Source: Octopus sinensis
Lineage: Eukaryota
NCBI RefSeq assembly: GCF_006345805.1
Contig: NC_043002.1
Location: 35,340,001 to 35,404,000 of the forward strand
Length of the DNA: 64,000 nt
Direction: 5' to 3'
Numbering within the stretch: the stretch's first letter is position 1; each line of letters opens with the position of its first letter. The notes beneath the pieces were generated by a model that made no database searches, was not told the DNA's origin, and saw only the letters and a program-made list of their open reading frames with translations. Shown here piece by piece: positions 10,150-43,510 of the stretch. Made by a program: the position numbers and the translations under genes.

Positions 10150-11672
10150 CTTAACACATGCGCAGAGTAAATAGAAAGCTGATCTAATACTGGGCTCTAT
10201 GCAGTTGATTGACGTCACCATCACTAGTTTTAACAAGAGAATCTTCTATTGTTTTCCATCTTAAACCATGTGTCTGCTCTCTGCTCATTCTTTCAACGCA
10301 CCTTGATAATGACAGAATGATTGCGTCTCTAACAACCTTGTACAAAACTACATGTACACATTAAAAAATATATTACGTGCAACTGGTCTTCCTGTTTGAT
10401 ATATATATATATATCCCATATTCGCGTAATTTCATTTCAGTCGTTTTTATTCCACTTCTCCTCCAATTTAAGAATCGAAAGTATATTTATTATGCCAGCA
10501 TTGTGAAATTTATCAACAAAGCCGGTTTTCAATTTAGTTGGGTTTATGCTAGATTGCCATCTAGCAAATCTTCACCAACAGCCATCACTTAATAATACCC
10601 ACGTGTCAGTCTAAAAAATCTTATTGTGAACGTAAGTGCTGTTGGTTTATTTAGTTCATGTTATTTATTTGACTGTATATTTATGTCGCAACTTTCTTTT
10701 GGCTGTTAAAACGATTTTTCTTCGCTTCTTAAAAAAAAAAAAAAATCGATATATTTCTTTACTCCCTTCTTTCCCTCAACCACCCATATTTTCAGTTTCG
10801 TGTAAATGAAAGAGAGAAAAAATGCTTTCTTGGCAGACATAAAATTTCCTACATATGAAAATTTTGCAAGTAAAGTATGGATGATTTAAAGTATATCGTT
10901 TTTATACCTCTCAACGGTCGTCCCATCTTTAGCGTAGCCAAAAACTTCTTTCGTAGTTATTGAAGACATCTTTTTATGTAATGGGGGAAAATAAAATACT
11001 AATTCATTCACTATTTTATATGGAAGGAAGAGGGGGAAATCAGGGAGGTAAGAGCCGCCTTACATTATGCTTATTGGTATGGAAGCGGGCAAGACATTCA
11101 GTCATGTGATTTAGGTCACATGACTATACTTTTTCATCTTAATCTCTAACCCTTCTTTCTAAAATCATTATTACAATAGTTGCTAATTCTTTAGAAAAAA
11201 AAAGCTTTCTGCATTTACAAATTAGACTTATTCGCTTATTTTTTTGTTTATTATTTTGCAAAAAAGGCTACATTTTAAACTGACTGGAAGTTCTCTTTTT
11301 TTTTTTCAATACTTGAAATTTGTCTCCAATATAATATAATAGTTGCATTTAAGAGGGAAGAATAAGTGCTCAATAATTTTCCGCTCTTTCTACTGCTTCT
11401 TTTTCCTAACTGCCTGCTGCCTTCCCCCTCTCTCTGTAATTTCTTACAATCCTTCTCTTGTTATATTATTAGCGAAGTAGAAGCAGTAATAGTGGTAGTA
11501 GTGGTGGTTGTAGAAGTAGTAGCAGTAGGTTCCTCTGTTTCCTACATAGCAACGTGCAGCTGCTGCGAGAAGTGGAGGGTATTATCAGATCCTCAGCTCT
11601 CACACAGACACATACTGCAGCGTTGAGCTCGTTTACAACTTAAAAGTATTTAGCGTTAGTGAAAATGGCGGC
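10150..11672 (+). promoter_or_regulatory. Probable (bidirectional) promoter region of hnRNP L
   Basis: Locally CpG-enriched. NRF1-like CATGCGCA at 10157-10164, full CRE TGACGTCA at 10210-10217, E-box CACGTG at 10600-10605, inverted M-box pair at 11100-11125, and YY1 consensus AAAATGGCGGC overlapping the ATG (11662-11672). No TSS data. Confidence 0.5.
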
Positions 11673-14600
11673 TTATGAGGGTCATGTAGCAAAGCGTCAA
11701 AAAACTGAAAATAATGGATATGGAATGAACCAAGGAGGAAAAGTAAGTGCTAGTAGTTTTCAGCTCCTTTTTTGTTATTACTACTATATATGCATTCGTA
11801 TTGTGTGCGTGATGTCTCTCAGTAGTAATTCTTTAACTAGATATATATATGATAAATCAATCAGTAATTGAATTGAAAATTACTCTTTTTCTTTGGACAA
11901 GAAAATAAACACGAAAATTTGAAATGAGGAGAAACTGAAAAATTTTAGTTTGTTTTCCTTTTTCTTGAAGAAATTTGCTAACCGGCTTATTTAGATAACC
12001 CTTTCGTTCATTCTATTTTTTAAATTGCCTGCGTATGGTTTCTTTTATTTTTTCCCTTTCTGATCTGTGGTTAAATATTATTTATCTGCCTTATGCTATA
12101 TTTTATTTAAATCTGCTTCATCATATTTCAGCACAAGTAAATTGTTTTTATATTCATAATATATAAAAAAATTTGTGTATTTTTTTGTGTTTTTTTTTTA
12201 TGACCGCATGGTCTTCGTGTGTTGGAAGAAGAAATGATGGCTACAGCTACATCATCTTTGAAATAGTGAAAGCAAGCTCTCTCGCTTATATTTCCTTTTT
12301 TTTTTCCCTTCCCTATGCATACATAAACAGTAAGAAAATATGATATGCAATACTGCATGCACGATGCTCTTCGTACTTAATTAGTGAAAGAAAAGCCACT
12401 CGTTTTTCTAACGACCTCATTATATTTCATTACAAAACAAAGACCGCTTTAAGGCTGTCATAGCTGCCCCCCCCCCTTCTTTCCTTTCTGCCGTCTTTTT
12501 CAATTTCTCTCCCTATTTGTGGCGATGACTAATATATTGCTGCTCCAAATAAAAAGAATTCATGAAGTGTTATTCATCATAATAATTGTAGAATTACTAT
12601 TTTATTTTTTGCATTTCTTATTTATTTTCCCCATTTGTAGAATTTCTTTCAAAAATGGAACTGATACACATCTTGCACTTTAATTATTGATTTTTGTGAA
12701 TTTCTTGTTATTGCATTTTTTTTGTTTAGTGAAATTATTAAGATATTGTCAAGACTACATTTTAATAATATGCTACAAACAATTAAATACATTAAATTTA
12801 TATTTTTATATTAACTACTCTTAAAAATGAAAAAAAAATTTTTTTTTTAATTCCTGGATTAATTCTGTATAGAATTGTGGCAGTTTGTATATTTTATGGT
12901 TGAATGCAAATCTGTCCACAAACGTTGTGAAAGTGGCTGGCTAAGGAAATATGGAGATGGCATTAATGATCTGGTGGCTGGCTAGCAACACATCAGTAGC
13001 CGACTACTTGCCAAAGTAGTAGCCATGTTCATTTCACTTGTAACAAAAATAAAATCGATGTGACCTTTTTATTACTCTGTCCGGCCGACAGTAGTATGGT
13101 GCTTTTCATTTTCACTTGGAAGATGGGAAGATATCCAAAAAATAGTATAAATATTATGGTATAAAAAGGAATCGGTATTTATTAAAATTTAGGATTTTCT
13201 CCAAGCGCTGTTCCTTTAGCACTGTTATATAACATTAGTCACCTTTTTATTATAAAACTAGAATATTGAGATTATTAGAACAAAAATGCTAGGAATCTGT
13301 CACTCTCTCAACACACTTGTCTCCATAATTGTTAACCATTTATTTTCTATACCCATTAAAGCGGCTTAATTTAGTATGATATAAATTTACTATATATAGC
13401 CTATCATGAAGGCGCATTTGCCGATCCTCCCACTTTGTATTTTAAAAACTGCCGGGTTTCACTTAAAGGTCAGATCGTTTATGTTTTTTTTTTATTATCA
13501 ATTCAATTAGTGCATATTCGATCATGTATAATATTAAAAAAAAAAAAAGCGTTGTTAAAAAAAGGTAAAGCTTTTTTTTCTTTTTTAAATAAAAAGAAAA
13601 TCTAGACAGTCGAACTTCATTTCATTGATATAAATACTTTGTATTTATATGAATATAAACTTTATTAGACTTGAGTATTTTAAATCTATGAAATTGGTGT
13701 CCCGTACATAGGGTTTTAACCGTCAAAACTCCCCTCGGCTACTTTTCATTCACCTAATTGGCTGTTTTCGTCGCTTCACTGTCCTACCGAACATTCAATC
13801 TTCTTCCTCGTATTACAGCAATGCGCCTGCGCAAATCTTGGCTGTATTTCCTTAACTTTTTTTTTTTACATCCTCCCGCCCATCCCCATCTTCTAAAACG
13901 TTAATGGAGGTGGGATATACTATTTATAATTTCTGATTTATTGCTACTTTCCTTTTATCCTACTTTTCATTACTTCGTTCCGATAAGAAAGAAAAATAAT
14001 GAATTTATAGTGTTTTGAGGATTTTGCTTTTATAAATTCATTGGTGAATGAATACGATAAACTGATTCTTGGTGCCAAAATATTTGGTTTGCTTCATTTT
14101 AAAATGAAAATCATTGTTCAGGTGATGGTGCGGAATCCAAATGCTACCATCGTTTGCAGAATGGTTGTTATTCTCTTGCTAAGAAACTTCAATTTGCTTC
14201 ATGTTTAAAATATATTGAATTTATCGTCACCCGTTGCAAACGTAAAAATTTATGAGAAAAACTATCTAAATGCTATCGCTAATCTGATTACCTCATATAT
14301 ATATATTATATAACCAACTACGTTGTATTCCATAAAATTTTAGATTAAATTTTTACAGATTTACTTAACGTTATGTCGATTGATTTTATAATTTTATTTA
14401 TATATCGATGGAATTTTTTTTAAACGGTTGTCTAATTAAATCGGTTAGGTTTTGATGTGAAACTCGGCTTCCTTCCAATTTATCGAATAATCAAATTTTC
14501 CAAAATTTTTGTGAACAATATACTGATATGAAGCATTTAAATATTGGACTTTTTTCTTTAATTTGACAGGATAAATTAATGGAAGATCCTCACAAACCAT

Positions 14601-17600
14601 CACCATCACCCGTGGTGCATGTCCGTGGTCTGTCTGAGACTGTGGTAGAGCAAGATTTGGTTGATACCTTGCAAAACTTCGGGTGCATTAGGTAAGTTTA
14701 TTGATATTTATGAGCCTTTCTGCTTTAAGGCTTCGCGTGTGATTGTGTTAATACTGTAAATGTTACATTCGTATACCAATCACTTCCCCCTCTCTATTAC
14801 AGTTATGTTATCATGATGCCAAAGAAAAGACAAGCTCTGGTTGAATTTGAGGTGAGTTGAGCGATTTTACTAAATCCATTGGAAATATTGAAATTTGTAT
14901 TTGTTGATTAGATGGTATTTTATCATTCATCAAATTGAGTTATATTTTTAATTTTTTTTTTTTCATATCGTGTATATTTAATTGTGAGGAAATTATTTAT
15001 TATTGTATAGGATATAGCCGGAGCGACTGAGTGTGTGAACTATGTTCAGTCCAATCAACTTTATGTTAGTGGTCACCCTGCTTTCTTTAATTTCTCTACC
15101 AGTCAGAAGATCCAGAGACCAGGGTAAGCTTTATATATATTTTAGAAAATATCGGGTCTGTTTACTGTGGGTATAATTTCATAAAGATGATTTAAGGCCA
15201 CTTAAAAGTATTGTTGTAAATAACAATGTATTTTGTTAAAAAGGGGTACAGAAAAACTACATATTTTACAAGTTTAATATATATATATATATATATATAT
15301 AATCCATCTCTTTTGTTTGTAGTGGCCCAGAAGATATGCGGACTGCAAACCATATTTTGCTCTTTACCATTTTAAATCCACAATATCCGATCACTGTGGT
15401 ATGTAACCATTTTAATATTTTCTATTCTAATTGGGCATTTGTTTAATAACCATTACAAATATCTTTGTATTTAATTTTCCAGGAAGTGATGCATACAATC
15501 AGTTCTCCATATGGGCAAGTACAAAGAATTGTTATCTTCAAAAAGAATGGTGTCCAAGCAATGGTTGAATATCCTTATTTTACAAAGTGAACATAGCTTT
15601 CAATAAATTAAAATTAACTATTGGTTGTTTGCATTCTGACTTTAAAGGCACTTAATTCTCTTTATTTACTTGCATAAAGCTAATGTTACTGTTTTCACTG
15701 GAATGAGTTTTTTCCACTGTTGTACTGTTATGATTAAATGCTTGGGGTGAATTTGTATAAATTGTTAGGTAAGATGCTTATTTGATAGGGCCATTTGTAA
15801 AATAAATATCAATTATTTTTAGAAGTTCTTTGACATTTGAGAGTTTTTACATTGTGTAATGTGTTCATATGCTGAGTGCACAGGACAAAAATATACTGAC
15901 ATTTATTAAACTCTAATAGCTGGGTATTTGCTAAGAACTCAACAATCCTGGCTGGAGGCAGGATTTCAACTCAGCCAAATCTGGTAATTTAACCCAAGAT
16001 AAAGGCAAAGTTGGCTTAGACAAGATTTAGACCCAAGTGCAGTTGGACAAAGTATTTTAGTGATCACTGTAGCAACTCTGTTAATTTGACGTTTTCTCTG
16101 TGTGTACGCATTACTGTGTTATTTAGAAATTGGAAGTCCATTTGCATGATTTCAGGTTCAATCTCAATGCATAGCACTTTGTGCAGGTCTCATTTTCTGT
16201 AGCCCTGTACTGACCAAATCCTTGTGAGTAGATTTGGTATTGCTGCAGAAATTGCAAAAAAGCCTGTTTGAGTGTAATGTTTGTCTCTGCTTCTTTTGAC
16301 ATCACTGGTAGTTATTATACAAGCAGTATTATTCATTTCCAATTTGCTGTGGAAACATGTCTGGCTACAGGAAAATATTACCGTGTTTGGAAATCAGGAA
16401 GATCATTCTGCTGTAGAAAATCAACCTCAGTAAACCGACCCATGCGGGCATAGGAAAGTATGTTAAAATAGCACAATTGTTTTATAAAATGTATATTTTG
16501 TAGTTGGTATTCCTTAACCATTCGTACATTTGAAACTGTTGATCAAGCAAAACGTGCAAAGCAGGCTCTGAATGGTGCAGACATTTACTCTGGTTGCTGT
16601 ACACTCAAGATTGAATATGCAAAGGTAAATTTTCAAGTTTTGAATTCAGTATTAGAAAATATATTCACTGTTATAGATCTTGCTTCAATTAATTCTGAAA
16701 TTTTTAATTGGTTAGCTTTTGAAAGTGAATTTAAGTTTCGATGTTTCATTTGTGGGTAAGTACCCTCATTGCAGGATTGTTTGTGTTGTGATTCATTCAA
16801 TGCTTTTGCAACTTAGGGTGATTATCAGATATGTCGTGTAAAGAATTTTGTTTTAAATATATTACGGTCTAGATTTTTGTTCTTAATAAATTCAGTTCAA
16901 TGGGTTTTTTAATTTGTTTTTTTTATCAGCCTACAAAATTGAATGTTGTCAGAAATGACAATGAAAGTTGGGACTACAGCAATCCTTCTCTCGGTAAGAT
17001 GCAATTTTAAACATTTTAAATTTGATGGACACCAGCACTCTTATTTTCCTTTCTAGAACTGGTGGTAATCCTGGTTAACATACGCACTATCCAGTTGAAA
17101 ATGACCGTAACTTGCTTAATTCTAACCTATTTAATGTTTCAATATTGCAAGCCAAAGGCATGGCTGTAGTTTTAATGTAACAATAGTTGCTACTAACATA
17201 CTCTTTCTTAAATTAGCACTAAGCAACCAAAACAATGAAATTATTTGTTATCTTGGTTCCTTAGTGATGTCTTCTGGTCTTGTTTAGAGTAATTCTGTTC
17301 TCTTGTTGCTTAATTGGAATAGTTTGCGAGTTTTTCCTTTGATTCCATAAGGGTGCTAGTGAACAACAATACCATTACATTTTGCAGAACTTAGGGAATC
17401 TGTCACCTTTGTTTAGCAGATAGCCCAGTGATGGGAAATCTGCTAGTCAAATTTCTTTAATTGGTGTAATTTTTAATGGAATGGTTTGGTTGTGGTATAC
17501 TAATAAATTATTCTAAGGTAGGTGGTTTTAAATTTGGCCATGGGCTTCTTCAGTCATTAACTTTAAATTATCTTTCTATTGTTTGTTAGTATCTTTTTGA

Positions 17601-20600
17601 GGAGTGGTTATTAGGGGAGGAAAAATGCATGCATACAAATACAAACAAGTGACCATTTCAGATAACATACAAAACATTTGTCTCAGTCATATTGAAACTA
17701 AATAAACTTTCAATTACAAAACATTTTATATCGTATCATAGACTTAACATTCCAAATTTCGTTACAAAACATGCACATTTTATGAAGCACAATCATCTGT
17801 ATTCTCAGTAAATGAATTAAAATGATCATGTGCTGGCAGGGAACTACTATTGTCTGAAAGATGGTAGTAGGTTAGTGCCCAGTGAAACCACTTGTTTGTG
17901 AAGTTATTCACTTGTTTTATTCTGCACTAGCTTTTTACATTCAGCCAAGTTGTTAAAAGTGATTTCCCCCTTATTTTTTTTATATATATATTTTGAACAT
18001 TAAAAAAATCTTGCCAGCCCTTTTTTAAACAGTTGATTATGAAGCAAGTTGTTTGCTGTCTGAGATGCCATCCTTTCCAAAATCCCCAACATGAAGACAA
18101 GTCATCCATCTTGAGAAAATCCATTTGAGAACAAACTTTAAAATCATTACACTAACATTTGGGTTTTTATTAAACCCATTAAAACAAGTCAGCCACATAC
18201 AACGTAGAAAAGAAGTGGACATGTTACCTAATATTCAGAATTTGTAAATGTTCCACCTTTCTATCCAGCAAAAATTACAAACAGAAGCTGCTATTCTACA
18301 TCTAGAACAATAGAAAAAGTTGCAGAATAAATTCAAGCACAGAAAGATATCAACATCCACATTACTCATCTGACCGTCACAGGTCACAGACTGGAGCATT
18401 CTCCACCTGCAGACAGACTTCCCATACACAGAAGAAGCACTATTCAGTCAGTCAGACAAGTACATCAACCAAACTTAAAATACAATATCATCACCACCAC
18501 CATCACTACCAAGCAGATACTCACCACCGCACAGAACAAAACATAAAGCGGCCAGGTCCACACAAGGTGTCACTATACCCTGTAAACCCATCCATCTGTC
18601 TGACTCCTACGCTTGTTTGCCTTCCTACAACCAAGTCTGGTTAGTTTACTGACCTGTGATTCTGTGTGCATTATACAGGGTGTAGGCCAGTGCAGGCTCG
18701 GCCCTCCTGCTACTACTACTACTACTGCTGGATGAGGAGGAGGAGGAGAATGTGAGCAGCATCGTGTTGATTGAACCATATCAGGCTCAACTACTTCATT
18801 GACCAACAGCTACTTCTGGCTTTAACCAAATCACCATGGCTCCTTCCATTGCTGTTATCTCACCAGAAAATCAACTGGTAGATTTTTTATTTTTCTCCTT
18901 ATTTTCCAGGATGTCTTTTATTAAAAATAATATTTATTTTTTTTAATATTTAAGTTTTCCATATATCTATTATACATTTCCTGTTTTTCCTTTTGGATTA
19001 CTAATTTTCATTCTCTGAAGCCATTTAAGATATTGGCTTGCTTTCAAAAAATTGACATTACCATCTAACATTAAAACAGAAAAGGTTAGACTATAATGAG
19101 ATATTTATTTCCTTCAATTTAATATTTTCATACATTAATCTTTTATAATGCTGGAACGTTTTAGAGCAAATGGAAGAAGTGTAGTCATCATTTGATTACC
19201 ATACGCTGACTGACTGACTGCTGCTGCTATCACCAGTTTTGTGTTTTTAACTGCAACAAGTAATAGTTTGGAAATACAAGAAAATTCAGTTTGTGTACAG
19301 AACACTGCATCTGGTTTTACTGTATTGAAAAGATAACTAAAATATTTGTACTCTAGCAAGATCTGTACATTTTCACAAACACACGTAGGCTGATTCTAAG
19401 TAGTGTAAGCAGAATAAACCCAGTGAAATGTTGAAAATTTACATTTATTACATTACATCTAAATTGCTAGTTGAAAACTATTCTAATTTAAAAATTTTTT
19501 ATGCATAGGTAATTAAGTGTAATGTGGATCAAAATAATTTAAAGTAATATATGCAGTGACTGCTCAATCATTCCCTACCTTCCCCCATACGATTACTTCG
19601 ATGCTGATCCATTGAAATCTAAATCTAATAATCTCAGGCATCTGACAAACTTTCCCTATTCCAAATATTTGGATTTAATTTTTTGTATTTTTGTAAATAT
19701 AAAAATTTCACTTGGACTTCTTCACATTCAATGGGTTTCACTTTTATTAAATGAACTATGAATTGAGAACTCCTTTCCATTTATTTTTTAAAATGTATGT
19801 ATACCAAAAAAAAAAATGCATTAGTTTATTTTGCTGGGGTGAGTTTTCCATCCACCTCATTGGTAAGTTGTGTAGAAAATTGCCAGTTATGTTTTGTTTT
19901 TGTGTGTGGGATCATGTGTTGATTTTTTTTCTTCTTCTTCCACTCCCTTTTCTGTGTCGTACATAATAGTCCAAACCACTGTAGTCAGATTCCCAGGCTG
20001 TAGTGAGTTACTTTCCTTGTACAGAATTGATATTTGCCGGATCTTGCAACTGGGCTTTTTTTTCTTCATCCACCTCTCCTCTCCCTTCACCACAGGACTT
20101 TTAAGAGAGATTACTACATTCTTGGAATGTAGATTTTCTTTCTGGAGGACACACAAAGCAAGCTGTTTTATTACATAAGTGCATGAACTGGTTAAATTTT
20201 AAAATTCCTTTGGATATATTAACATTTTTTCTTAAGGTGTAGGTGAGGTTGAAATAGTTCGATTTATGAGAATGCACAACTTGTGCTTGATTTTATATAT
20301 TCATACATTATCTCTGGTTTAGCTAATTCGCTTACTAAATCTGCAAATTAACTCTTCCCATTCATCTTAGTTTTTATGATATTAACATTTTAACGCGTTT
20401 CCTAATTTACGGGGGGTTTTAATTTCTTTTTTTTTTTTCTCTCATTTCTAATTTACACTAAAGCTTTGTTTCATAATGATTCAGATTGAGGAGTTAATTT
20501 AGTTAGATTTACATTGCCACATTTCCTGAAAGTTATTCAAATGGTTGGTAATTTATGTTGACCAATCTTGTGCCAGCCAAATTCTTAGTAATTCTTTCAG

Positions 20601-23600
20601 CTGAGAAAGTTAAAACCATAGTATACTAAAAGGCAACAGCAGTCAGTTAATCTGCGGTTTGTTTGGCAAACTAGTAACTTCACTGTCTGCCGCTTTCCTT
20701 GCTTGCTCTGAGACTTATCTCACCTGTGTCACTTTGTTTCAGGTAAGAGTCCTGTGGTTGCTAAAAATCAGCCTTTGCTGCAAGATCCGCGCTATGCACC
20801 AGGGCCCACTCCCTATGGTGAGTGTCCTCAATCACCAGGTGAAGTATTGTTCTAAAGCTCCATTTTCTTCTTAGTTGTTGTCACATCTCATAATGCTCTA
20901 GTTTTGAGTTGCATAATATTTAAAAATAGAGCTTCTCTATCTTTCTTGGTTACTAGAATTTATTTTAAGCAATACCTCTCTTTTAAACATTTCGGTGCCA
21001 GTTTTCGATAATGAAAAGTAGTGTCCTGTATAATGCAGAGTGCTACTTGGTCACAAGTGTATTGAAAGTGATTGAATATATGCGTTTTTAAAAAAAAAAT
21101 TCTTTTTTTTTTTTTAATTATCTAAAAATTGCTATATGGCAACTATTTGTGGTTATCTGTTGGTGTGAGTTGTTTACTGTGAAAATGCTTGTTGAATGGC
21201 ATGGCAGGCTGCTGTTATTTTTTCAATATATCTTGGCCTTATGGGCCGTTCTCCAGACTTCTTTCTATTAGTGCAGATATTTTCTTCAAACTGTCTGCAT
21301 CCTTAAACTATATTACAATGTAGGTTTTAACAATCATTTAGTCCCTGTGTGATATTTTTCTTCTCCATTTGTGGATTTGGTATCTCTGGTTGGTTTTCAA
21401 ACTATAAAACATACAGCCTTTATGTTGTAGCTAATTGACCTGAAATAATTTTTGGACCCCTTGTCCTGTCAAGCTTGTAATTTTCTCCCCTCCCACTTAG
21501 TCTTTTTACCTTCTATTAGAGTTAGCAAAATGTATTGAATCTTGCATTTTTTAAGATTTTTTTTTAGCAACCATTTAAGATGTTTTCTCCAAATTGAAGA
21601 AAATAAAATGTAGTTAAGGGTTAAAGTGAAACAAATTTTAGTATTCAGATTGAAAGACAAGTAATTTTGTACAAAAATGAATTATTAGCACCATTTCATA
21701 TTACATTATTTGCTTGCTGAATTTAATTTATTCACATTGTCATCCAATCATTAATTCTTATACTCTAATTTGCCATAATGTTGATTTGCTTCATTTTATT
21801 CATTTGTTTATTTTTCATATCTAAAGAAGTTGGACTCTTGGGTAATTTGCTTTTTATTTTTTTTTTTCTTCTTCCTCCATTTTGTCTTGGATGATTGCTT
21901 TTCTAGTGCTTGCTAGTCGTGTCATCTAAGATGTTGTAAAGTTACTGTTGTGCTACCTAGTATGTTTTGACTTAACTATACCTTTGGCTGGCATTAACAC
22001 TTTCAAAATCTTTCTTGGGTTGGGCAAGATATAGTTAGCATTAAAATGATAGCTTTTCTTTTTATGAGTGTCGTCTTCATTGTTTTTGTATTGTGTGTAT
22101 ATATATATATCTATATATATAAATATATTAAATGTGGCAGCTCTTGTACTGTTTGCCACCCCCTCAGCTTATTGGCTCTCTCACACCTATATTCAAATAA
22201 ATATGGTACATATTCTTTTAGATACATACATACATGCATAAAATATAAATGGAAATGGGTTTTTTTATGAATACAGCTGCTCTGGTTCTTTTATGTTTGA
22301 ACATGAAAGTGAATTCAGAGAGAAAGTTGGTATTGATATTTTAAAATGTTTGGTATCAGCTTATGAGATTGTTTTTTATATAAACAAAAAAATTACTCTT
22401 GATATTAAAACTCTTTGATTGAGTTTGCCCTCTTTTGTAGATCTATTAAGAAATGGAGTTTTTCTCTGAAGTGTTTTAAATTATTGGATTGTTACATATG
22501 TGCAAATTTTGAGTTTTACACTGTACATAGCTGAGTGAGCCTACTGTTTCTGCAAAAATTTTATTTAGTATTGGAAATGTTTTCGTATAATGGCTGATTT
22601 GGATTTTTTTTTTATTTATTTATATATATACATATATATATATATTTGAAATTGTCTACTTCTGCAAAAATAGTATAAGTGTTGAGATAAACTAATGGCT
22701 GCCTAAGCCCTGAACATAATACTTTGATAATGATTGTTAGGAATTTCCTACAATTAAATTTGGGAGATTTATGCTGTAAATAATGCTTTGATTGTTATTG
22801 TCTTGCCAATCGCTCCTTCATTTTTGATTGTTAGTTTAAACCTAATTTGCTAATACTTTTTGCATTAGTTTTCATATATTACTCTCTTGCTTTCACTCTT
22901 CATACACATTATGCCTCTAATTTTCCTTGCATGCTTTAACAAAACATTTCATTCAAAGCACTTGTATAGTGATTAGCAACTAACTATTTTCCTTTATATT
23001 TTATGAATAAATAGTATGGTTCATGCTACTTAATTAAATTTAAGGGAAAATATTGCTAGTCAGTAGCAGAATGCAAATAATTTAGGACTCTGACTTTATT
23101 ACCTGCTAAGATTATCATAAAATGGTTGCAAGTTAGTATTAACAGCACATTTAAAATATTTGGTAAAGCTGTTAAGACAGAAATTAAGTTGCAATGAATA
23201 TTTTTGCCTTGGGATGGAAACTCAATCTCAACAAAGCTACTAACCTGCGATTCCATTTGGTAAGCAGTGTAGTAAACTTGTAACTTATTACTAAACTTCT
23301 TCAAAATCTTATATCGAATAGGCAGCCTACTCATTAAGGAATATAGTCACAAAAGTGTCAACTAAAAAGTTTGGTTGTATTTTATTTTCTTAAATTTTGT
23401 AGAGCAGTAGGGGTGTTATTCATTATCATATGATTGTCAACTGGCATGCCAACAAGTACACATACTTTAATTGAAGAAATTTGAATTTTCTGTTCCTCTT
23501 TATTAGGATGATGGCTATGAAATAATTTGTAGTGTTACTTATGTGACTCATGGAAATTGTTTTTAATCATTTGAGTCTTGGATATTTTGATTTGATTGCT

Positions 23601-26600
23601 ACAGAAATTGTTCTTATCATGTAATAAAGTTTTTATTTTTGTTTATTTTATTTGAATTAGCTGTTGCAGAATTTTGGATCATAATTTAATAGAAATGTAA
23701 TTGGAATTTTTGGCTGTGGTTTTTACTGCTTTTTTTATTTTCTTGCCATGTTTTCTCATGCTATAAAGTTGGTTGTTCTGTAATTTCTACATAAATTTAT
23801 CTTCAATTATTTTACAATGGATCATTATATTGAAAGCTAATTAAGTGTAATTTGAAATAATTTTTAATATCATTAAACTACTTATTAATATGCAAGATAT
23901 ATGAAAGTAATCAATTTGATGCTATTATTTGTTTTAAATTCAAATTTTAGGGAATCATCCAGATGTGCGAAGAGGTGGTGGTGGTGGTCCTGGAATGGGT
24001 CCTCCACCTGGTGGCCATGGCGGTGGCTATGGTGGGCCAGGTCCCATGTATGACGGTGATAATTATGACAACTATTGTGGTGGCGGAGGAGGGGGCAGAG
24101 GTGGTTATGGCATGCAAACTGAGCGTTATGGACCAGGCAGCACTGGAATTCTTGTAAGCTTTCTTTACATGTTAACATTAATTTCACTTTTTTCATTTTC
24201 CCCCCCAACAGCCCACACACAAGTGCGTAGTGAATCACACATTCGCTTCCTGCTTTAAAATATTGAAAAACTGTTCAGGCAAGTTCTTAAGAGTTTAGAG
24301 CTGTTCGTGATAGATTTTATTAATAAGTTCTTATTCTCTGATTCTGTTAAGAATTTCTTGTGGTCCATTTCAGTATTTGTCCATTCAGGATAAGCATATT
24401 GGATGACCGGTATGCTTTTGTGGGTAGCTTTTCGAAAACGAATTCAAACGAGAGTACTCAGAGAGTGTAAACCTCTGCCAAAACAACACCAACATCCTTT
24501 CAATGATTAGCTACAGAAGATTTTTAAGATGGGAGTATCTGAAATAAGCTTACTCTCACAAACGAGGATAAAAATGAGCCCAACCGTGTTTAAAAAAATC
24601 CAGAACCCTTGTCTGGTTCCTGATCAATCCCAATGGTAGTCAAGAAATATGAAGATGACTGTAGAAAATTTAGTAACTATCTAACACAAGCCAGTTAACA
24701 ATTTCACCATTCAAAATAGTTACAGCCTAAAGGGAGATAATTGAGAAGGACTTGAAAGTTAATGTAAGCTCGTAATCATGTAAAGTAGATATAACATAAT
24801 CCAGAATCCTTGTCTGGTACCGGACTGATCCTGAGATTTACTTGGTTTGTGCCAGCCACGAGGCCAAACATCCCTGAAAGTGTCATCCAAATCCATCCTG
24901 CTGTTCTTGAGATATCTTGTCCGTGGACAAACAGCATGACTGAAAACAATACCTTTGCTAAGATGGAGGTAATGAACTCAAAGTTTTTTTTTTTTAATTC
25001 CTAATTGTCACCAAGCCATGATTTACAGTACTTTGTTGGATGTTATAGGTATAGTCAGTCTGCTGGAAAGATTCTTTAGTATTAATTGTGGGCATTTATG
25101 TAACTGTGCTGACTCAGTATGTTCATATTCGGTCTTCATTTTGTAGTTTTCAATGGCAACATGTTTCAAGTTATTCATTGCTTTATTGATTTGGAAGTTG
25201 TTTATGTAGGCACTTATCAAAGATGTCCCATTCTGTCTTTCTTCCCAGACATAATGGAATCTATGTGTATATCACAGGATAGAGGGTTTTCTATTCTGTA
25301 TATAAAAAAGTTTGGCTACTTTTTCTGGCAGGTCATGTAACACATACAGGCTCTGTTGTTGGTCAGTCTCAGTAATGATTTAGCTGTTATTTAGCCTCGA
25401 ATCCACCCTAATACAGCAAACCCATTATCAGACAATCCAGCCTTCAGCAAACCGTCTTTTTAGGGATAATCTAGGACATTACATGCTATGGGCGTGTGAT
25501 GTCGTTAGGGGGTTACTTTGGTTGCTATTTTTAGTGTGTCGATCAACCAGGTAGAGGCTCCTTCATTGGTTTGTTTGTGTGATGAAATTTTTTTTACACG
25601 TGTAATGTATATATCATTGGCAGAATTTAGTTAGTCAAGAGCTGAAAGTTTCATGTATTGGCACTTACCAAACACGAATTTGGCTGTTGTTACTCTGTGA
25701 CTTCTGCCTATTATTAATGTGTGTGCATGTATGGATATATTTATATAGATAGGCACAGTCTCATATATGTTGCTATAAAAGCATCTCTGGTTATTAAAGA
25801 AGGGTTCTGTTGATTCATTTTGTCAATGGACCCAGAAGTTGTTCGCAAATAGTGACAGTAACTTTCTTCAGCTGAATACATCATCGTTTAACGTCCGCTT
25901 TCCATGGACGGTTCAACTGGGGTCTGGGAAGCCTGAAGGCTGCACCAGGCCAGTCAGATCTGGCAGTGTTTCTAAAGCTGGATGCCCTTCCTAACGCCAA
26001 CCACTCTGAGAGTGTAGTGGGTGATTTTATGTACCACCGACACAGGTGCCAGACGAGGCTGGCGAACGGCCACGATCGTATGGTGTTTATGTGCCATTGA
26101 TTGGTTAAAATTACCCAAATACAACTTTGACACGAATTAACTTCTAAGATACAAAAATTGTTTTTAGAGAAAATCTTAGATAAGCTGTGTCAATTCTTGT
26201 TACAGGTTCCTTGTGCATTCTTATTACAGTATGAGGGGGTTTTTTTAGTCTGTGTATGAACAACTCAGAACTTATTTAGTTCTTTTTACTGTTTCCAATT
26301 TAACTAAGTTTATGGGTAAACTGCATTTGGAAAGAGCAATTGTCGTTAATCTGATTCAGTTGCACACCTTAAGTTTACTTATTGATTAATCAGGTTCTGT
26401 GGCTGCAGGTAGATTGAGTTTGAGAAAGTGCTAGCATTTGACATTTTTTGTGTTGAAAGGTTTTAAAAGTTTTGAGTTTGTTCTTTAAAGTATATACTTT
26501 TTACTTCCAGGATCGCTATGGTGCTCCCCCAATGCCACCTTATGAAGATCCTAACTCACGTATGATGGGGCAACACCCAAGTGGTGGTGGAGGTGGTGGT

Positions 26601-29456
26601 CCTCAACAAGGAGCAGTACTTATGGCTTATGGCCTTAATATGGATAAAATTAACTGTGATTCAATTTTCAATTTGTTCTGCCTTTATGGTAATGTTGTAC
26701 GGGTAAGTTATGGTTGTTTTTGTTTTGTTATTCTTTCACTAGAAGAAATTTTTCTTAAACTACAAATTGTTTGCTTGAGATAACTTTTTCTTTTTTCTTT
26801 TATAATTAGATTAAGTTCTTAAAGAGCAAAGAAGGGTCAGCAATGGTCCAGATGGGGGATAATCAAGCAGTGGACAGAGTCATTCAGAATCTCAATAACT
26901 GCTACTTTGTTGGTAAAAAGATACAACTGGGGTTAGTATTTTTCATTCACTTAATACATTCTTTTTGGCTACTGCTTCTATAAAGGTAGCATATTTTGCC
27001 AGCTATGTTTTGTCTAAATTTGGTTTAAGTGTCTTGCTGCATATAATGATTCTTCAGTAAATCAAATTATTTGTCAAATGATTATCTTTGCCACAGTTTT
27101 ATTAGTGGGAAAATAGTTTGTTTTTTTTTCTTCTTCGGAAAAATTGGCAATTATCTTCATGTATATTTTTCTTTCTAATACAGATATTCTAAGCAGGCTT
27201 TTCTGCAAGATGTTCCTAATCCACATACTCTTCCAGATGGATCTCCATCATTCAAAGATTTCATGGGTAGCCGAAACAACCGTTTCACTAACCCAGAAGC
27301 TGCAAGCAAGAATCATATCCTTTTTTAATTAATCTTACATCATTAGATAACTTATATGCATTGTGTTAATATTCGATGTATATAGTAACTCATTTTAAAC
27401 AATTCAAAATTTGGGTGGGGGTGCATTTAACTTTCTATTACTAAAACAGGATGGAAATTTAGAATAAATTCAGTATAACAGAAACAGATAACTATTTGTC
27501 GAATTATGTTTTCTTGTAAATTGTACAAATGTTCACAGCTTTAATTTTTGAGTTTTGCTTGGAATCCTTAACATACATCAAGTATTCAAGGGCCTGCTAA
27601 AGTACTACACTATTTCAATGCTCCACCCAATATAACAGAGGATGAAATCTGTCAGGTTGGTTATAATTATTTGTTTTTAGTCTTTGCTGTAAGAGAATGT
27701 TAAGTTCTTCAATAAATTCCCATTCTATTTTGTACTAACTGTGCATATTTTTTATACCAGGTGTTTACAGATGCTGGAGCAAAGAGTCCTGTAAGGATTA
27801 AACAGTTTCCTTCCCGTAGTAAGTATTTACTTTGTCTTTGTGTTTTCTCTCAGCTCAGCTGTGGTGCCAGGTTTAGGCTTATTGTCTCTCTCTGACCAGG
27901 TGTTTTTTATTATAGCCCCAGGCCAACCTAAGTCTTGTTAGTGGATTTGGTAGATGGAAATTGAAGGCCATTGTGTGCATATCTTTGTGTTTTCTCCCTC
28001 ACTTAATAACCAGTGATGGTTTGTTTGCAGCACCATAACTTAGAGGTTCATATAAAACTGATAGAAAGTGCTAAGCTTTAAAGAATAGTATGTGGGTATT
28101 TTTTTTTTTTTGTTTTTTATATATATATATATATATAAAAAAAATTTATATATATATATATATATATTAAAGACCCTTCAGGTTAGTGTACTAGCATGGC
28201 CATGGTCCAGTGACTGAAACTAGTAAAAGATAGGGTCGGGAAGTTTAAGTGCAGTTTTCTTTACAGTGTTTGGTTTAATTTGCATCAATGTTAGCTGAAT
28301 ATTTTTCTTAATAGTTTTAATTTGTGTTTCAGCGGAAAGAAGTTCTACTGGGCTGGTTGAGTTTGAAACTAAAGCCGATGCTATTGAAGGCCTTGTGGCT
28401 TGTAACCATCAAAGTATTCCCAATCCTAGTAAGTTCAGTTTTCATGAATTTTTTTCAGTTTACACATAAATAGCACCCTTGCTTATTGTGTTTTATATAC
28501 AGTGGTGAAGTAATGAACAGAGTACTATACACCAAGGGCCTCGTTCTATGGTATTTGTGAATTTAGACTGGTTTCATAAAGTAAGACATCAGCATAAGAA
28601 ATTGTTAGATAAGGAGTTATACAATAAAATTTTAATATTGAAGGGTTGTGCAAATTCCTGGTTTTCTTTTAACTTAATATACATTAAACAGAATAAAATA
28701 CTGGAATGTAAATCAAATTTACATGCACAGGATTTCTAGCTTCTGAACATATATGGAATGCCACCTTTTCTTCTGCATAAGGTTTCATTTTTACAGAAAT
28801 CACTCCAAAGGAAAATGTAAAAAGAAATTAATCTAATGGTTTTGTTTCCTTGAGAGGACTGTAGCCAAATCTAACATCTTCCTTAAAGATGACTAAGAAA
28901 AGTATTTTAACTTTTACTCTATTCAGGCGTAAGTCAATGGAAAAGGTGAAAAGTCTCCAGAAGTTTGCAGCTCTCAGATATGTAAAATAGTGTAAATTTG
29001 TTTACATGGTGAAATCATGTGTTATCTCAAATGATATTTGCACTGATATTTTCCTTTTAAACACAACTAGGTTATTATAGTCATTTTTAGGCAGGTTGGC
29101 AACATTCGCTTGTGAAATTTTGAACCAGGTTAATATTTGTAATTAGTATGTGACATTGTTTACTGAGTTGCTTACAAAGGCTCAAGTGTGTAATTCTTAT
29201 AGTAGTACTCTGATATGACTAAGCTAAACATACTTTCCTGACTTTTTTTTTCTTCTCCCTACCCCTGTTAGATTATTTTGTATCTCTAGGAATTCACCAG
29301 CTGTTTGTTTTAACTTACCCACCTTGCTTTTCTTTTTTTCCTTTTATGACACAGGCTCGTTACTTCAGTGCTGTCTTTCTGTTTTTGTTCATTTCAGATG
29401 GCAAGAATCCATTTGTCTTCAAGCTGTGCTTTTCTCAGACCCCTATAATGGGTTAA
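11665..29456 (+). CDS. HNRNPL: Heterogeneous nuclear ribonucleoprotein L orthologue (4 RRMs, Gly/Tyr/Pro-rich RRM2-RRM3 linker), 17 coding exons, 564 aa
   Basis: Exons: 11665-11742, 14570-14691, 14803-14851, 15011-15123, 15323-15398, 15483-15568, 16528-16624, 16930-16993, 20743-20817, 23951-24153, 26511-26702, 26810-26931, 27184-27314, 27582-27655, 27761-27818, 28333-28428, 29398-29456. They total 1695 nt with compatible phases and no internal stop. The translation has hnRNP L hallmarks: SPVVHVRGL, MPKKRQALVEFED, IVIFKKNGVQAMVEF, ALNGADIYSGCCTLKIEYAKP, FNLFCLYGNV, RNNRF, VLHYFNAP, LKLCFS-like terminus (FKLCFS). 14 introns are GT-AG and 2 are U12-type. Confidence 0.96.
15569..16527 (+). other. 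U12-type (minor spliceosome) AT-AC intron 6 of hnRNP L
   Basis: 5' site /ATATCCTT at 15569, branch site TTCCTTAAC at 16510-16518, terminal AC at 16526-16527. Removal gives GTT GA|A TTT = the conserved VEF of RRM2 RNP1. Confidence 0.95.
18679..18751 (+). other. Candidate 73-nt poison cassette exon in hnRNP L intron 8
   Basis: Branch-like TACTGAC at 18647-18653, acceptor TACAG ending 18678, donor AAT|GTGAGC at 18752. Inclusion frameshifts to TAA at 20744-20746. It is preceded by a CA-rich tract. Confidence 0.55.
24440..24978 (-). mobile_element. Dispersed repeat, Helentron/HINE-like
   Basis: Reverse complement of 36530-36960 with an internal duplication. The classification from the TTATTAC..GTTTGTTTGTCC start is tentative. 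Confidence 0.55.
25879..26100 (-). mobile_element. RTE 3' UTR fragment, antisense in hnRNP L intron 10
   Basis: CATCATCGTTTAACGTCCGCTTTCCATG tail and body shared with 48432-48660. Confidence 0.85.
27315..27581 (+). other. U12-type intron 13 of hnRNP L with non-canonical AT-AA termini
   Basis: 5' site /ATATCCTTTT at 27315 and branch TCCTTAAC at 27565-27572. Only the AA at 27580-27581 restores the frame (AAT C|GT ATT CAA = NRIQ, as in vertebrate KNRIQHP). Confidence 0.88.
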
Positions 29457-30568
29457 GCTGGGTCTCTAAATTTAGGAGATTGCAACCATGGTTGATATAA
29501 GCTGTATACTTAACCCATATATGTCTATTTGTCTTTATTGATGATAAAATGTCTAGAATCATATGAATTAAATGGAAGCAAGAGAACTCCTCACTCAGGC
29601 ATTTTACTTCACCTCCTCATGTTCTCCAAAGCTATGTAGCTACCATTATTCATGTCTTAGTTCTTCTCATCATTCACATCATAATTAAAAAAAAAATTTA
29701 AAAAAAAGATTGACTCCAATTTTTATTTCCTCCTTTTTATTGAGAATACTTTAAATTCCTCATTTTTACATGTTTCATTACTGGGAAGTTTGACTTTGGG
29801 CTTGCTTTTGAGGTTGACAATGAACGTGGTAGCCCATTCTAATGTACTTTTCTTTTTCTTTTTTTTTAAGAATGTATCAAATATTGCTCTAGGTCCTGTC
29901 TCTGTTCCTGTCACTCATGAATTTATCATTTTAGTTACAATGTGTGTGTAATTTGTGCATGCACTGCTTCCTATTTATTGATGGCCAGCAAAATTTTACC
30001 ATTCTAATGCTTAGTTTTTAACATCATCTAAACTTAGGTTAACATTCAGTTATGCACTGACTTCATTTAGTTCTTTGCCTGCCAGTATTAAAATAATACC
30101 CTTAGAACTGACTGCTGGGCAATTCTTTGAATAAACAAATTATAATTTTTAAAGAATGCAGCTTTTTTTTTTCCTCTCCCTTTATATAATTAATTGTATC
30201 TTGGAAATACGTAAAAGACAAAAATTTAAGTTTAATTTTCATTTTTTTAAAATAAAATGTATTTATGTAGTGCATTGTTACATGTTATTTTGTTTATCAT
30301 ATTGTTATCCTTCATTGTGCAGATATATGCATACTAATTTCCACTGTAGGTAAATTTTGCATTCGTAAAACTCGTCAGATCACACGTCCATGCTGTTTGA
30401 GTTATTTTTAAAATTCTTAGTATTAACAGCTACTTACTGAGAAGGTTGTGGGTCAAGGTTGGATCCCCAATGAGTGTTATAACCTGTCTGAAATTGCTTA
30501 TTTTCTAAACAAGCAAGTTGGCCTATGAGTTTGGCATTATCTGTATTTACAGGGAGGTTGTTGAGAGG

Positions 30569-30608
<40 letters not shown>

Positions 30609-32469
30609 TGTAACACATGGGGTTGTGTTTATTTTGCTGAGGATTGGTTGTATTAAGAGACAATATAGTTATTAGCAGTAGTATGCTGTTACAATTGAAT
30701 TTATTTTGTTACATATAAGATATAATTGGAAAAAGGGTTTTTCTGAAAATTTAGTTGTGTGCATAGGGACGTTAGAAAAATAGGTTAGGTCCACAGCAAA
30801 GGTTAGTTATATGTAATGTAGTTTACTACACAATGCATTTCATCAGATATTGCGGTTTATTGGATCTGACCAATTTGAGACTGATTTTTTTTTACACAAG
30901 TCCACCATTTTGTGGTGTTCAATACATTTTCATTTGCTAAAACACAGGTGATACTTTTATTGTTTGAGGTGGGTATGATTAAGCTCATTACAATGGAAAA
31001 CAATTCACTCGCCAAGTAGCAGGTTTACCCTTTTGTTGCTGTATTTATTGTGAGATGCTCTGTTTCTTTCAATTACTTTAAATATAACAAAGAATTTAGT
31101 AAAATAACTTAGTTATCATTAAGCTAGTGTTTGGAACATAAATTGTGACTAAGGTATGGAAGATTTTATTTCAGGACTTATGGGAACAAGACATCTGTAC
31201 TTATTGCTTGGTTTCTGTTTATCAGGTGAAACTGAAGTTAGTGTGCAATCTTGACATATCCATTTACAATACAAAGAATGTAGTGTAGGAATTCTAAGAG
31301 CACTAGTAGTTACTTTTGAGAATTTGAATCCTTTGGTATGGACAATAATGTAAGAACTGGGGTCTGATATCTCAAACTATTCTACCAGTTCATTACCTCA
31401 AAACGTTCCATTGTCCTACCTCCAAAGCTTTATTTGAATAGCATGCAAATGACATGACTGCAATGAGTTATAATAGCTTTTATTGAATGGAATACTTAGT
31501 GGTTGTAGAGACAAGCATGCCTGTATCTGAGAATTTGCTTCTTTTTATAATTTTTCTCAATTATAAGTACTCCAAAGTGAAACCTGTCTAGCTGTTCAAG
31601 TAGGGACGTTGATTTTTTTAATTTAATCTTGAGTTGTATAATGAGTATACCAGTGTGAAGAATGAAAGAGTGAGACACGTGATTAGTGTTGGAGTCTACA
31701 TTCCATTTTAGTTCTGTAGTGGGTCATCTACTGACCAAGGACAAAAGTCTCGTCCTGAATAACAGACTTTTATATATATATATATAGAATAGTTTTGTCA
31801 ATGTTTCTCTTGAGATTTAGGCATGTGACTTTAAGGGCTTTAGGATAATTGTAATTTTAAGGTGTTTTTGGATTTACATTGACGAAAGCAGCAGTTGGAC
31901 AGAAAATTGTGGTTGGTATAACCGAAGACACAAAGTTATATGGTTAAACTATGTCTATTTTCATGAATATGGAGAAAGTTGGGTGTACATTGGAGCCATC
32001 TGCAGAGAAACAGCTGATCTGATCCAGTTGGTAGGAGAGGGTAATTGATACTTACGGGGGTTGTTGGTGAACTGTCTAGAGTTTTGGTTGTGATAGCTTC
32101 GTATTAATTTTGTTTAGATCTGTGGGTCCCAACCTTTTTGCTACCAGGGATCCTTTTTTAAATGAATTTTCCCATGAACCCCCAGGATTTTGAATGGTCT
32201 GACAGCTTAACATGTTTGTGGACCACTGATTTTTAGATTTGATGCCATTCACTCTCTCAGCTGGGTTAAAGCACATCTGTTACCAAAGAAAGAAAATCTT
32301 TCATGATTAGTTGACTGACTTAATTTTATCTGGGTTTCTGTTGAGATATATTGGCTTCATGTCAGTTAATTTTGAAAATATTGAATTTAGTGAAATACTT
32401 TAGTTATCAGTAAGCTGGTGTATGATCACCACATAGTACCAGACTAACAGCAGGGCTTGGTGCAGTCCA

Positions 32470-34202: not shown

Positions 34203-34238
<36 letters not shown>

Positions 34239-43433: not shown

Positions 43434-43438
<5 letters not shown>
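43004..43438. repeat. About 435-bp AT-rich near-perfect palindrome
   Basis: Arms 43004-43233 and 43241-43438 with a 7-nt spacer. The left arm carries a 38-bp tandem duplication. Confidence 0.92.

Positions 43439-43510
<72 letters not shown>

What the first reader, a model, noticed from the sequence alone, without database searches (positions are those of the whole stretch)
27315..27582. Rare AT-AA minor intron with a frameshifting AG one base downstream
Seen: perfect U12 donor ATATCCTTTT and branch TCCTTAAC, then ATACATCAA|G. Only the AA terminus gives NRIQGPAKVLHYFNAP. The AG at 27581-27582 and the AC at 27575-27576 both frameshift to TAA at 27633-27635. Known: U12 3' sites are chosen largely by distance from the branch point, and AT-AA termini are very rare. 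Inferred: a one-nucleotide acceptor choice could act as a built-in NMD rheostat linking hnRNP L level to minor-spliceosome fidelity. Standard predictors will mis-annotate this junction.
Basis: partly seen in the sequence, partly recalled or inferred. Interest (0 to 1): 0.75.

Follow-up and report, generated by a model that had tools for sequence, protein, structure and literature searches.

The report
AT-AA minor intron in octopus hnRNP L
The octopus hnRNP L gene has a genuine minor-spliceosome (U12-type) intron ending in AA instead of AC; it is conserved in other octopods and already used in the public annotation, so it is an ordinary example of a known rare intron subtype.

Summary
Window 27315-27581 is a 267-nt U12-type intron: donor ATATCCTTTT, branch site TCCTTAAC, then 9 nt ending in AA. 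It lies in phase 1 inside the invariant Arg codon of the hnRNP L motif KNRIQ. Only junction 27314|27582 keeps the frame. The AG (exon from 27583) and the AC (exon from 27577) both run into TAA 27633-27635.

The AA is not an assembly error. Octopus bimaculoides and Argonauta hians have the same AT-AA ends. The orthologous intron is AT-AT in Sepia pharaonis, AT-AC in Pecten maximus, and U12-type GT-AG in an unidentified invertebrate contig. An 18-exon model built from the window translates 575/575 identically to RefSeq XP_029637625.1 (Octopus sinensis hnRNP L X2), so the junction is already annotated.

AT-AA is the commonest non-canonical minor-intron ending in animals, about 1.1% of conserved minor introns. 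The AG one base downstream is forced: it is the terminal A plus the obligatory G of the Arg codon.

I found no evidence for the proposed NMD rheostat, and junction reads could not be checked here. The best reading is a constitutive A-type minor intron whose last base drifted. Interest is low.

The parts
11665..29456 (+). Complete coding region of the hnRNP L gene (18 coding exons in the X2 isoform)
   Evidence: The exon model built from the window translates 575/575 identically to XP_029637625.1, Octopus sinensis hnRNP L isoform X2. Homology search.
27184..27314 (+). Upstream exon, ending ...AAG AAT C (first base of the Arg codon)
   Evidence: It encodes YSKQAFLQDVPNPHTLPDGSPSFKDFMGSRNNRFTNPEAASKN.
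27315..27581 (+). U12-type AT-AA intron, 267 nt, phase 1
   Evidence: The ends are conserved in O. bimaculoides and Argonauta hians.
27315..27324 (+). Minor-spliceosome 5' splice site ATATCCTTTT
   Evidence: The same 10 bases are present in O. bimaculoides, Argonauta, Sepia and Pecten; the unidentified contig L007 has GTATCCTTTT.
27565..27572 (+). U12 branch-site motif TCCTTAAC, with a 9-nt spacer to the 3' end of the intron
   Evidence: The same 9-nt spacer occurs in the gene's AT-AC intron and in the Argonauta and Sepia orthologous introns.
27580..27581 (+). Terminal AA, the productive 3' splice site
   Evidence: It is the only in-frame acceptor. It restores KNRI, which is invariant in 17/17 homologs, and it is the junction used in the RefSeq model.
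27581..27582 (+). AG straddling the junction; a possible out-of-frame acceptor one base downstream
   Evidence: Its G is the second base of the invariant Arg codon C|GT and is present in all species compared.
27582..27655 (+). Downstream exon (GT ATT CAA GGG ... = R-IQGPAKVLHYFNAPPNITEDEICQ)
27633..27635 (+). TAA reached in the +1 frame if the AG or the AC is used
   Evidence: It lies 20 nt before the next exon junction and 174 nt before the last one.
15569..16527 (+). Second minor intron of the same gene, canonical AT-AC (ATATCCTTAT ... TTCCTTAAC + 9 nt ... AC), joining AMVE|FETVDQ
   Evidence: It is AT-AC at the same position in O. bimaculoides, Argonauta, Sepia, Pecten, shark and alligator.

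Best explanation
This is a constitutive minor-spliceosome (U12-dependent) intron of the A-type (AT-AN) class in the octopus hnRNP L gene.

How it most likely works (inferred from established knowledge of the minor spliceosome):
- U11 and then U6atac pair with ATATCCTTTT.
- U12 pairs with TCCTTAAC.
- The 3' splice site is taken about 10 nt downstream of the branch adenosine, which here ends in AA.
- Joining 27314 to 27582 rebuilds the invariant Arg codon (C|GT) of KNRIQ.

Evolution:
- The intron occupies an old position, shared at least by cephalopods, a scallop and an annelid-like contig, and it is U12-type in all of them.
- Only its last base has changed: C in Pecten, T in Sepia, A in octopods.
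- This fits the known tolerance of a 5' A for any 3' terminal base.
- The AG one base downstream exists because a terminal A sits in front of the obligatory G of the Arg codon. It is a by-product, not a designed switch.

Any use of that AG would give a frameshifted transcript open to NMD. I expect this to be splicing noise at a low level.

Shown here: the anatomy, the frame, the conservation, and agreement with the annotated protein. Not shown: dependence on the minor spliceosome, and the low use of the AG.
For: - The donor, branch site and spacing match the U12 consensus.
- Only the AA junction is in frame.
- KNRI is invariant in 17/17 homologs.
- The 18-exon model is 575/575 identical to RefSeq XP_029637625.1.
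- The same AT-AA ends occur in O. bimaculoides (intron 82% identical to the window's) and Argonauta hians (intron 47% identical, alignable only at its ends).
- The orthologous intron is AT-AT in Sepia pharaonis, AT-AC in Pecten maximus, and U12-type GT-AG in contig JAAUYG010214965.
- The spacer after the branch motif is 9 nt in the window, O. bimaculoides, Argonauta, Sepia and the gene's own AT-AC intron, and 8 nt in Pecten.
- Transcript-derived decapodiform proteins (P0122 cluster, Logan assemblies) carry KNRIQGPAK.
- Literature: AT-AA is the commonest non-canonical minor ending in animals (PMC10639083).
- Switching of minor-intron subtype between species is documented: MSH3 is AT-AA in human and AT-AC in mouse, and IK is AT-AT in human and AT-AA in mouse (PMC1557818).
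- AT-AN introns are treated as one functional A-type class (PMC8280824).
- The optimal branch-site to 3' splice-site distance is 11-13 nt (PMC3584512).
Against: - No RNA reads from octopus were available, so the junction rests on protein conservation and on a RefSeq model whose RNA support I could not inspect.
- The AG lies at a spacing (10-nt spacer) at least as good as that of the AA.
- AT-AG minor introns are nearly as common in nature as AT-AA ones (0.89% against 1.12%). Sequence alone therefore cannot show that the AG is ignored.
- Selection of U12 3' splice sites is described as error-prone (PMC3584512).
Confidence: 0.88

Rival explanations
1. The minor spliceosome chooses between the AA end (productive) and the AG one base downstream (frameshift, stop codon, NMD). 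The ratio would tune hnRNP L output, coupling it to minor-spliceosome activity or fidelity.
For: - The AG is within the permitted distance, with a 10-nt spacer.
- The stop codon lies 174 nt upstream of the last exon junction, so it is NMD-eligible under the exon-junction model.
- A 5' A can be joined to any 3' base (Dietrich et al. 2005, from my own knowledge; the paper is not held), and AT-AG minor introns exist.
- U12 3' splice-site choice is error-prone (PMC3584512).
- Mammalian hnRNP L does autoregulate through an NMD isoform, the poison exon 6A (PMC7547044 citing Rossbach 2009).
- The AA|G arrangement is retained in three octopods.
Against: - The AG needs no selective explanation. The G is fixed by the invariant Arg codon, so any octopod with a terminal A has it.
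- Sepia (TAT|GT) and Pecten (CAC|GT) have no such AG, so the arrangement is not a feature of the gene family.
- The CA-rich stretch ACATACATCA, a possible hnRNP L binding site, becomes TTTATATCA in Argonauta.
- No truncated octopus hnRNP L product appears as a separate cluster among the hits, and all listed RefSeq isoforms are full length. Both are weak negatives.
- AT-AG combinations are described as disfavoured (PMC3584512).
Confidence: 0.07
2. Assembly or sequencing error. The true base at 27581 is C and this is an ordinary AT-AC intron.
For: AT-AC is about 20 times more common than AT-AA. Only one base differs.
Against: Independent assemblies of two other species, O. bimaculoides (GCA_001194135.2) and Argonauta hians (GCA_054771915.1), have the same A. 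Sepia has T there, so the cephalopod lineage had already left C.
Confidence: 0.01
3. A-to-I RNA editing, which is abundant in coleoid cephalopods, converts the terminal A (27581) to inosine. The site would then be read as AG, as in the known self-editing of mammalian ADAR2 pre-mRNA that creates a 3' splice site.
For: Only background knowledge (my own) that coleoids edit heavily and that AA-to-AI can create an acceptor. The in-frame position is the one that would be edited.
Against: An A-type 5' end does not need a 3' G. AT-AA introns are spliced in mammals and plants, which lack heavy editing. Sepia has T at this position. I did not look for a double-stranded structure around the site.
Confidence: 0.02
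4. The intron is removed by the major (U2-dependent) spliceosome despite its odd ends.
For: Rare U2-type AT-AC introns exist (PMC1557818 abstract).
Against: The donor ATATCCTTTT and the branch site TCCTTAAC at 9-nt spacing match the U12 consensus and are conserved across molluscs. The rest of the intron is not conserved. There is no pyrimidine tract between the branch site and the 3' end.
Confidence: 0.02

Closest known systems
A-type (AT-AN) U12-dependent minor introns, AT-AA subtype (for example human and mouse RASGRP4 and FLJ21106, and human MSH3)
   Same: Consensus ATATCCTT donor, TCCTTAAC branch site close to the 3' end, a terminal A in place of C, and non-zero phase. The ending changes between related species (AC, AT, AA) exactly as reported for MSH3 and IK (PMC1557818; PMC10639083; PMC8280824).
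   Different: Nothing in kind. The host gene and lineage (octopod hnRNP L) are not, to my knowledge, individually described. The first exon base is G, so an AG overlaps the junction.
The conserved AT-AC minor intron of hnRNP L (window 15569-16527; also in shark and alligator HNRNPL)
   Same: Same gene, same donor motif, same branch motif, and the same 9-nt spacer in the window.
   Different: That intron is AT-AC in every species examined and is shared with vertebrates. The KN|RIQ intron is absent from the two vertebrate HNRNPL genes and the three arthropod genes examined, and its last base varies.
Mammalian hnRNP L autoregulation through poison exon 6A and NMD (Rossbach et al. 2009)
   Same: Same protein family. 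It is an unproductive splice isoform that would lower protein output (PMC7547044).
   Different: The mammalian circuit uses a cassette exon and conserved CA-rich hnRNP L binding sites in a U2-type intron. Here there is no conserved binding site, no observed isoform, and the alternative is a 1-nt shift at a U12 acceptor.
Minor-intron-linked regulation by competing splice sites (SRSF10, U11-48K and U11/U12-65K, prospero)
   Same: The idea that minor-spliceosome activity sets the ratio of productive to unproductive mRNA (PMC8329584; PMC3584512).
   Different: Those cases involve competition between the U2 and U12 machineries, or a conserved enhancer element. Nothing comparable is visible here.

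Membership tests
U12-type (minor) intron | Extended 5' splice-site consensus /RTATCCTT | tested here: met
   ATATCCTTTT at 27315-27324. The same motif is present in four other mollusc genomes.
U12-type (minor) intron | Branch-site consensus TCCTTRAY close to the 3' splice site (optimum about 11-13 nt; PMC3584512) | tested here: met
   TCCTTAAC at 27565-27572. The distance from the branch A to the last intron base is 10 nt (11 nt if the first A is the branch point).
U12-type (minor) intron | No pyrimidine tract between the branch site and the 3' end | tested here: met
   The spacer is ATACATCAA.
U12-type (minor) intron | The orthologous intron is U12-type in other species | tested here: met
   O. 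bimaculoides, Argonauta, Sepia, Pecten and contig L007 all show U12 motifs at the same codon position.
U12-type (minor) intron | Removal depends on the U11, U12, U4atac and U6atac snRNPs | not testable with these tools
   Needs snRNA knock-down or a minigene assay.
AT-AA subtype of A-type minor introns | The junction actually used has the intron starting AT and ending AA | tested here: met
   It is the only in-frame junction. The model is 575/575 identical to RefSeq XP_029637625.1. KNRI is invariant. Caveat: direct octopus junction reads were not available.
AT-AA subtype of A-type minor introns | The terminal A is a real genomic base, not an error | tested here: met
   Same base in two further octopod assemblies.
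NMD-coupled autoregulatory splicing switch | The unproductive isoform is observed | tested here: inconclusive
   No truncated octopus product appears among the clusters, and the listed RefSeq isoforms are all full length. Assembled proteins would rarely capture a minor NMD isoform.
NMD-coupled autoregulatory splicing switch | A conserved regulator-binding element at the regulated site | tested here: not met
   The CA-rich ACATACATCA of the window is ACATACGTCA in O. bimaculoides and TTTATATCA in Argonauta.
NMD-coupled autoregulatory splicing switch | The isoform ratio responds to protein level or to minor-spliceosome activity | not testable with these tools
   Needs an experiment.

The most novel reading that the evidence does not exclude
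In octopods the minor spliceosome uses the AG at 27581-27582 for a measurable, variable share of hnRNP L transcripts. This would produce a frameshifted NMD target, so hnRNP L output would depend on how accurately the minor spliceosome picks a 3' site one base apart. If so, the 1-nt slip was acquired when the last intron base changed to A in the octopod lineage.
Probability: 0.06. Interest if true: 0.5.

Novelty: new member of a known kind. Interest (0 to 1): 0.2.

Why it matters
It matters little beyond annotation. It is a clean, conserved example of the AT-AA ending. Together with its relatives it shows, at one orthologous position, four endings: AT-AC (scallop), AT-AT (cuttlefish), AT-AA (octopods) and U12-type GT-AG (an annelid-like contig). 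That illustrates the already described drift of minor-intron ends.

It also shows that gene predictors which insist on GT-AG can damage this gene: the deposited Sepia pharaonis protein lacks 14 conserved residues here.

If the 1-nt slip to AG turned out to be used and regulated, it would be a compact natural reporter of minor-spliceosome 3' site fidelity. Nothing found here points that way.

Tried and rejected
- First protein search with only the C-terminal 207 residues. It returned short fragments and arthropods, with a best hit of 75%, and wrongly suggested that no close relative was in the database. The 538-residue query fixed this.
- Arthropod loci (crab, scorpion, mayfly). They have no intron at this position. 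Crab and mayfly have a GT-AG intron 7 codons downstream, so they say nothing about the ending.
- Metagenome scaffold carrying P0014. The C-terminal half is intronless there.
- Degenerate DNA pattern scan of metagenome contigs. It gave 3 hits. Two were intronless or cDNA-like sequences in which the codons CGT ATC C mimic GTATCC. One, L007, was a true U12 GT-AG intron.
- Look-up of P0121 itself. It failed because only the longest isoform of a gene is on record. Cluster members were used instead.
- Vertebrate HNRNPL. A true HNRNPLL locus was not examined, because the shark protein named 'L-like' looks like HNRNPL.
- The papers by Dietrich 2001 and 2005 and by Levine & Durbin 2001 are not held. 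Their content is cited from memory or through reviews.
- Literature search for HNRNPL or HNRNPLL minor introns. It found only a mention that HNRNPLL has a U12 intron with a nested U2 intron (PMC8329584).
- Third protein search for the frameshift tail: not run. Any such product would share about 430 identical residues with the query and would already have ranked at the top as its own cluster.
- A possible minus-strand U12 pair (ATATCCTT at 1020-1013, TCCTTAAC at 233-226). There is no coding context, so I judged it chance.
- Rfam and tRNA scans of the window: no hits.
Full report
**1. What is in the sequence**

The exon ends ...GCA AGC AAG AAT C at 27314. ATATCCTTTT starts at 27315. TCCTTAAC lies at 27565-27572, followed by ATACATCAA (27573-27581). 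G at 27582 opens the next exon, GT ATT CAA GGG CCT....

Joining 27314 to 27582 gives ...SRNNRFTNPEAASKNRIQGPAKVLHYFNAPPNITEDEICQ. Starting the exon at 27583 (after the AG) or at 27577 (after the AC) shifts the frame, and both run into TAA at 27633-27635.

The finding's coordinates are right, except that 27582 is the first exon base. The intron is 27315-27581, 267 nt, in phase 1. No equivalent shifted pair of sites gives the same mRNA (direct reading).

**2. The gene and the organism**

A guide alignment and exon-by-exon reading gave an hnRNP L gene on the + strand. Its start codon is at 11665 and its stop codon ends at 29456.

An 18-exon model translates to a protein 575/575 identical to XP_029637625.1, hnRNP L isoform X2 of Octopus sinensis. 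The window is therefore O. sinensis or something indistinguishable from it. The public RefSeq model already uses junction 27314|27582.

All introns in this model are GT-AG except three:
- the AT-AA intron of the finding;
- a second minor intron at 15569-16527, with ATATCCTTAT ... TTCCTTAAC + 9 nt ... AC;
- the last intron of isoform X2, which ends in TG. This is an alternative 3' site 3 nt past the AG that my first model uses.

**3. Is AA the junction actually used?**

KNRI is invariant in 17 of 17 aligned homologs, and only the AA end rebuilds it.

Proteins translated from transcript assemblies (Logan) of a decapodiform cephalopod carry the same KNRIQGPAKVLHYFNAP (P0122 and cluster mates).

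I had no octopus reads. The octopus junction itself therefore rests on the reading frame, on conservation and on the RefSeq model.

**4. Is the A real?**

| Species or contig (locus) | 5' end | Branch site and 3' end | Ends |
|---|---|---|---|
| Window | ATATCCTTTT | TCCTTAACATACATCAA\|GT | AT-AA |
| O. bimaculoides (L010) | ATATCCTTTT | TCCTTAACATACGTCAA\|GT | AT-AA |
| Argonauta hians (L011) | ATATCCTTTT | GCCTTAATTTATATCAA\|GT | AT-AA |
| Sepia pharaonis (L012) | ATATCCTTTT | TTCCTTAACATTTCTTAT\|GT | AT-AT |
| Pecten maximus (L013) | ATATCCTTTT | GACCTTAACCCCTTCAC\|GT | AT-AC |
| Contig JAAUYG010214965 (L007) | GTATCCTTTT | ACCTTGACGACCATTCTCAG\|GT | GT-AG |

L007 is an unidentified contig whose protein looks annelid-like.

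The Argonauta intron is only 47% identical to the window's overall, and is alignable only at its ends. The shared ends are therefore conserved, not merely undiverged. The assembly-error explanation is rejected.

**5. How old and how widespread is the intron?**

The KN|RIQ intron is absent from crab, scorpion and mayfly hnRNP L. It is also absent from shark and alligator HNRNPL.

The other minor intron (VE|F) is AT-AC in every species that I examined for it: the four other molluscs, the shark and the alligator.

So hnRNP L carries one deeply conserved AT-AC minor intron. It carries a second minor intron that I could show only in lophotrochozoan-type genomes, and the last base of that one varies.

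**6. How it most likely works**

The donor and branch motifs are the recognition elements of U11/U6atac and U12. This is established knowledge; see PMC3584512.

The 3' site of U12 introns is set mainly by distance from the branch site, with an optimum of 11-13 nt (PMC3584512). Spacings measured here:
- The spacer after the branch motif is 9 nt in the window, O. bimaculoides, Argonauta and Sepia, and in the gene's own AT-AC intron.
- It is 8 nt in Pecten.
- The AC at 27575-27576 has a 4-nt spacer, far shorter than the 8-12 nt spacers at the junctions actually used in these introns and well inside the 11-13 nt optimum distance. I judge it too close to be used.
- The AG has a 10-nt spacer and is geometrically acceptable.

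A 5' A is reported to splice to any 3' base, with C preferred (Dietrich et al. 2005, from my own memory; the paper is not held). Reviews say non-canonical ends work, often less efficiently, and that AT-AG is disfavoured (PMC3584512).

Natural frequencies in conserved animal minor introns (PMC10639083 Table S1):

| Ends | Share | Count |
|---|---|---|
| GT-AG | 74.2% | 54,669 |
| AT-AC | 21.8% | 16,044 |
| AT-AA | 1.12% | 823 |
| AT-AT | 0.95% | 701 |
| AT-AG | 0.89% | 658 |

The octopod and Sepia endings are thus the two commonest non-canonical types.

**7. The rheostat idea**

The AG exists because the last intron base is A and the first exon base is the G of the Arg codon. With C in the upstream exon, Arg requires G there. 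Pecten (CAC|GT) and Sepia (TAT|GT) have no AG. No selection for an AG needs to be invoked.

hnRNP L binds CA-rich RNA, and in mammals it autoregulates through poison exon 6A (PMC7547044). The CA-rich run next to the octopus site is not kept in Argonauta.

If the AG were used, the stop codon would lie 174 nt before the last junction, so it would be NMD-eligible under the exon-junction model. Whether that rule holds in molluscs is unknown to me.

No truncated octopus product shows up, but this is a weak negative.

U12 3' site choice is described as error-prone (PMC3584512), so a low level of slippage is plausible. A regulated one is unsupported.

**8. Annotation**

RefSeq (O. sinensis, O. bimaculoides) and the Argonauta annotation carry the correct peptide. 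The deposited Sepia pharaonis protein CAE1231871 reads ...FMGSRNNRPAKVLHYF... and lacks FTNPEAASKNRIQG. That is what a GT-AG-only predictor would produce.

**9. Verdict**

The feature is real and correctly described. It belongs to a known and catalogued class. It is conserved in octopods, and its junction is already in the public annotation. The regulatory interpretation has no support from the sequence or from the comparison. Interest is low.

Noticed in passing
window 15569-16527 (+): A second minor intron in the same gene, canonical AT-AC (ATATCCTTAT ... TTCCTTAAC + 9 nt ... AC), joining AMVE|FETVDQ. It is AT-AC at the same position in O. bimaculoides, Argonauta, Sepia, Pecten, a shark and alligator HNRNPL, so it is an ancient bilaterian minor intron.
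   Followed up: yes
L012 (Sepia pharaonis) 30456-31042; protein P0257: The orthologous Sepia intron is AT-AT. The deposited protein CAE1231871 lacks 14 conserved residues (FTNPEAASKNRIQG) at exactly this junction, a probable mis-annotation. Transcript-derived relatives (P0122) have the residues.
   Followed up: partly
window 29398-29400 (+): RefSeq isoform X2 (PNPSKNPF, against PNPNGKNPF in my first model) is reproduced only if the last intron ends 3 nt further on, at TG instead of AG (TTTCAG ATG|GCAAG). This is a GT-TG (equally TA-GG) alternative 3' site. TG acceptors in tandem with AG have been described in U2 introns (my own recollection).
   Followed up: partly
window 20818-20838 and 21827-21841 (+): An alternative 5' site extends exon 20743-20817 by 21 nt. 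With a 15-nt microexon (AAGTTGGACTCTTGG, read), it inserts ECPQSPEVGLL in isoform X2.
   Followed up: yes
L008 1342-1384; L009 1376-1418 (-): In intronless or cDNA-like homologs the codons for Arg-Ile-Gln (CGT ATC CAG) themselves spell GTATCC, the core of a U12 GT-type donor, at exactly the position where molluscs have the minor intron. This caused false pattern hits. Whether it is more than coincidence is unknown.
   Followed up: no
window 25876-26097, 33949-34278, 35721-36110, 47386-47811 (-), 48471-48911, 49757-50514: A dispersed repeat whose chance ORFs read ...[23 protein letters not shown]...; one copy lies inside an hnRNP L intron. It was not classified, and ARAGORN and Rfam find nothing in the window.
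   Followed up: no
window 45635-46105 (+), 51022-51588 (-), 53431-53862 (+), 57179-57940 (-): ORF fragments that look like parts of non-LTR retrotransposons (endonuclease-like and reverse-transcriptase-like stretches). This is judged by eye only and was not scanned against profiles.
   Followed up: no
window about 43400-44600 and 47700-48500: Long AT-rich microsatellite-like tracts that give YIYIYI... ORFs on both strands.
   Followed up: no
L004 about 3472-3747; L006 about 48922-48973: Crab and mayfly hnRNP L have an ordinary GT-AG intron after ...RIQPPSK, 7 codons downstream of the mollusc minor-intron position. The scorpion has no intron in this stretch.
   Followed up: partly
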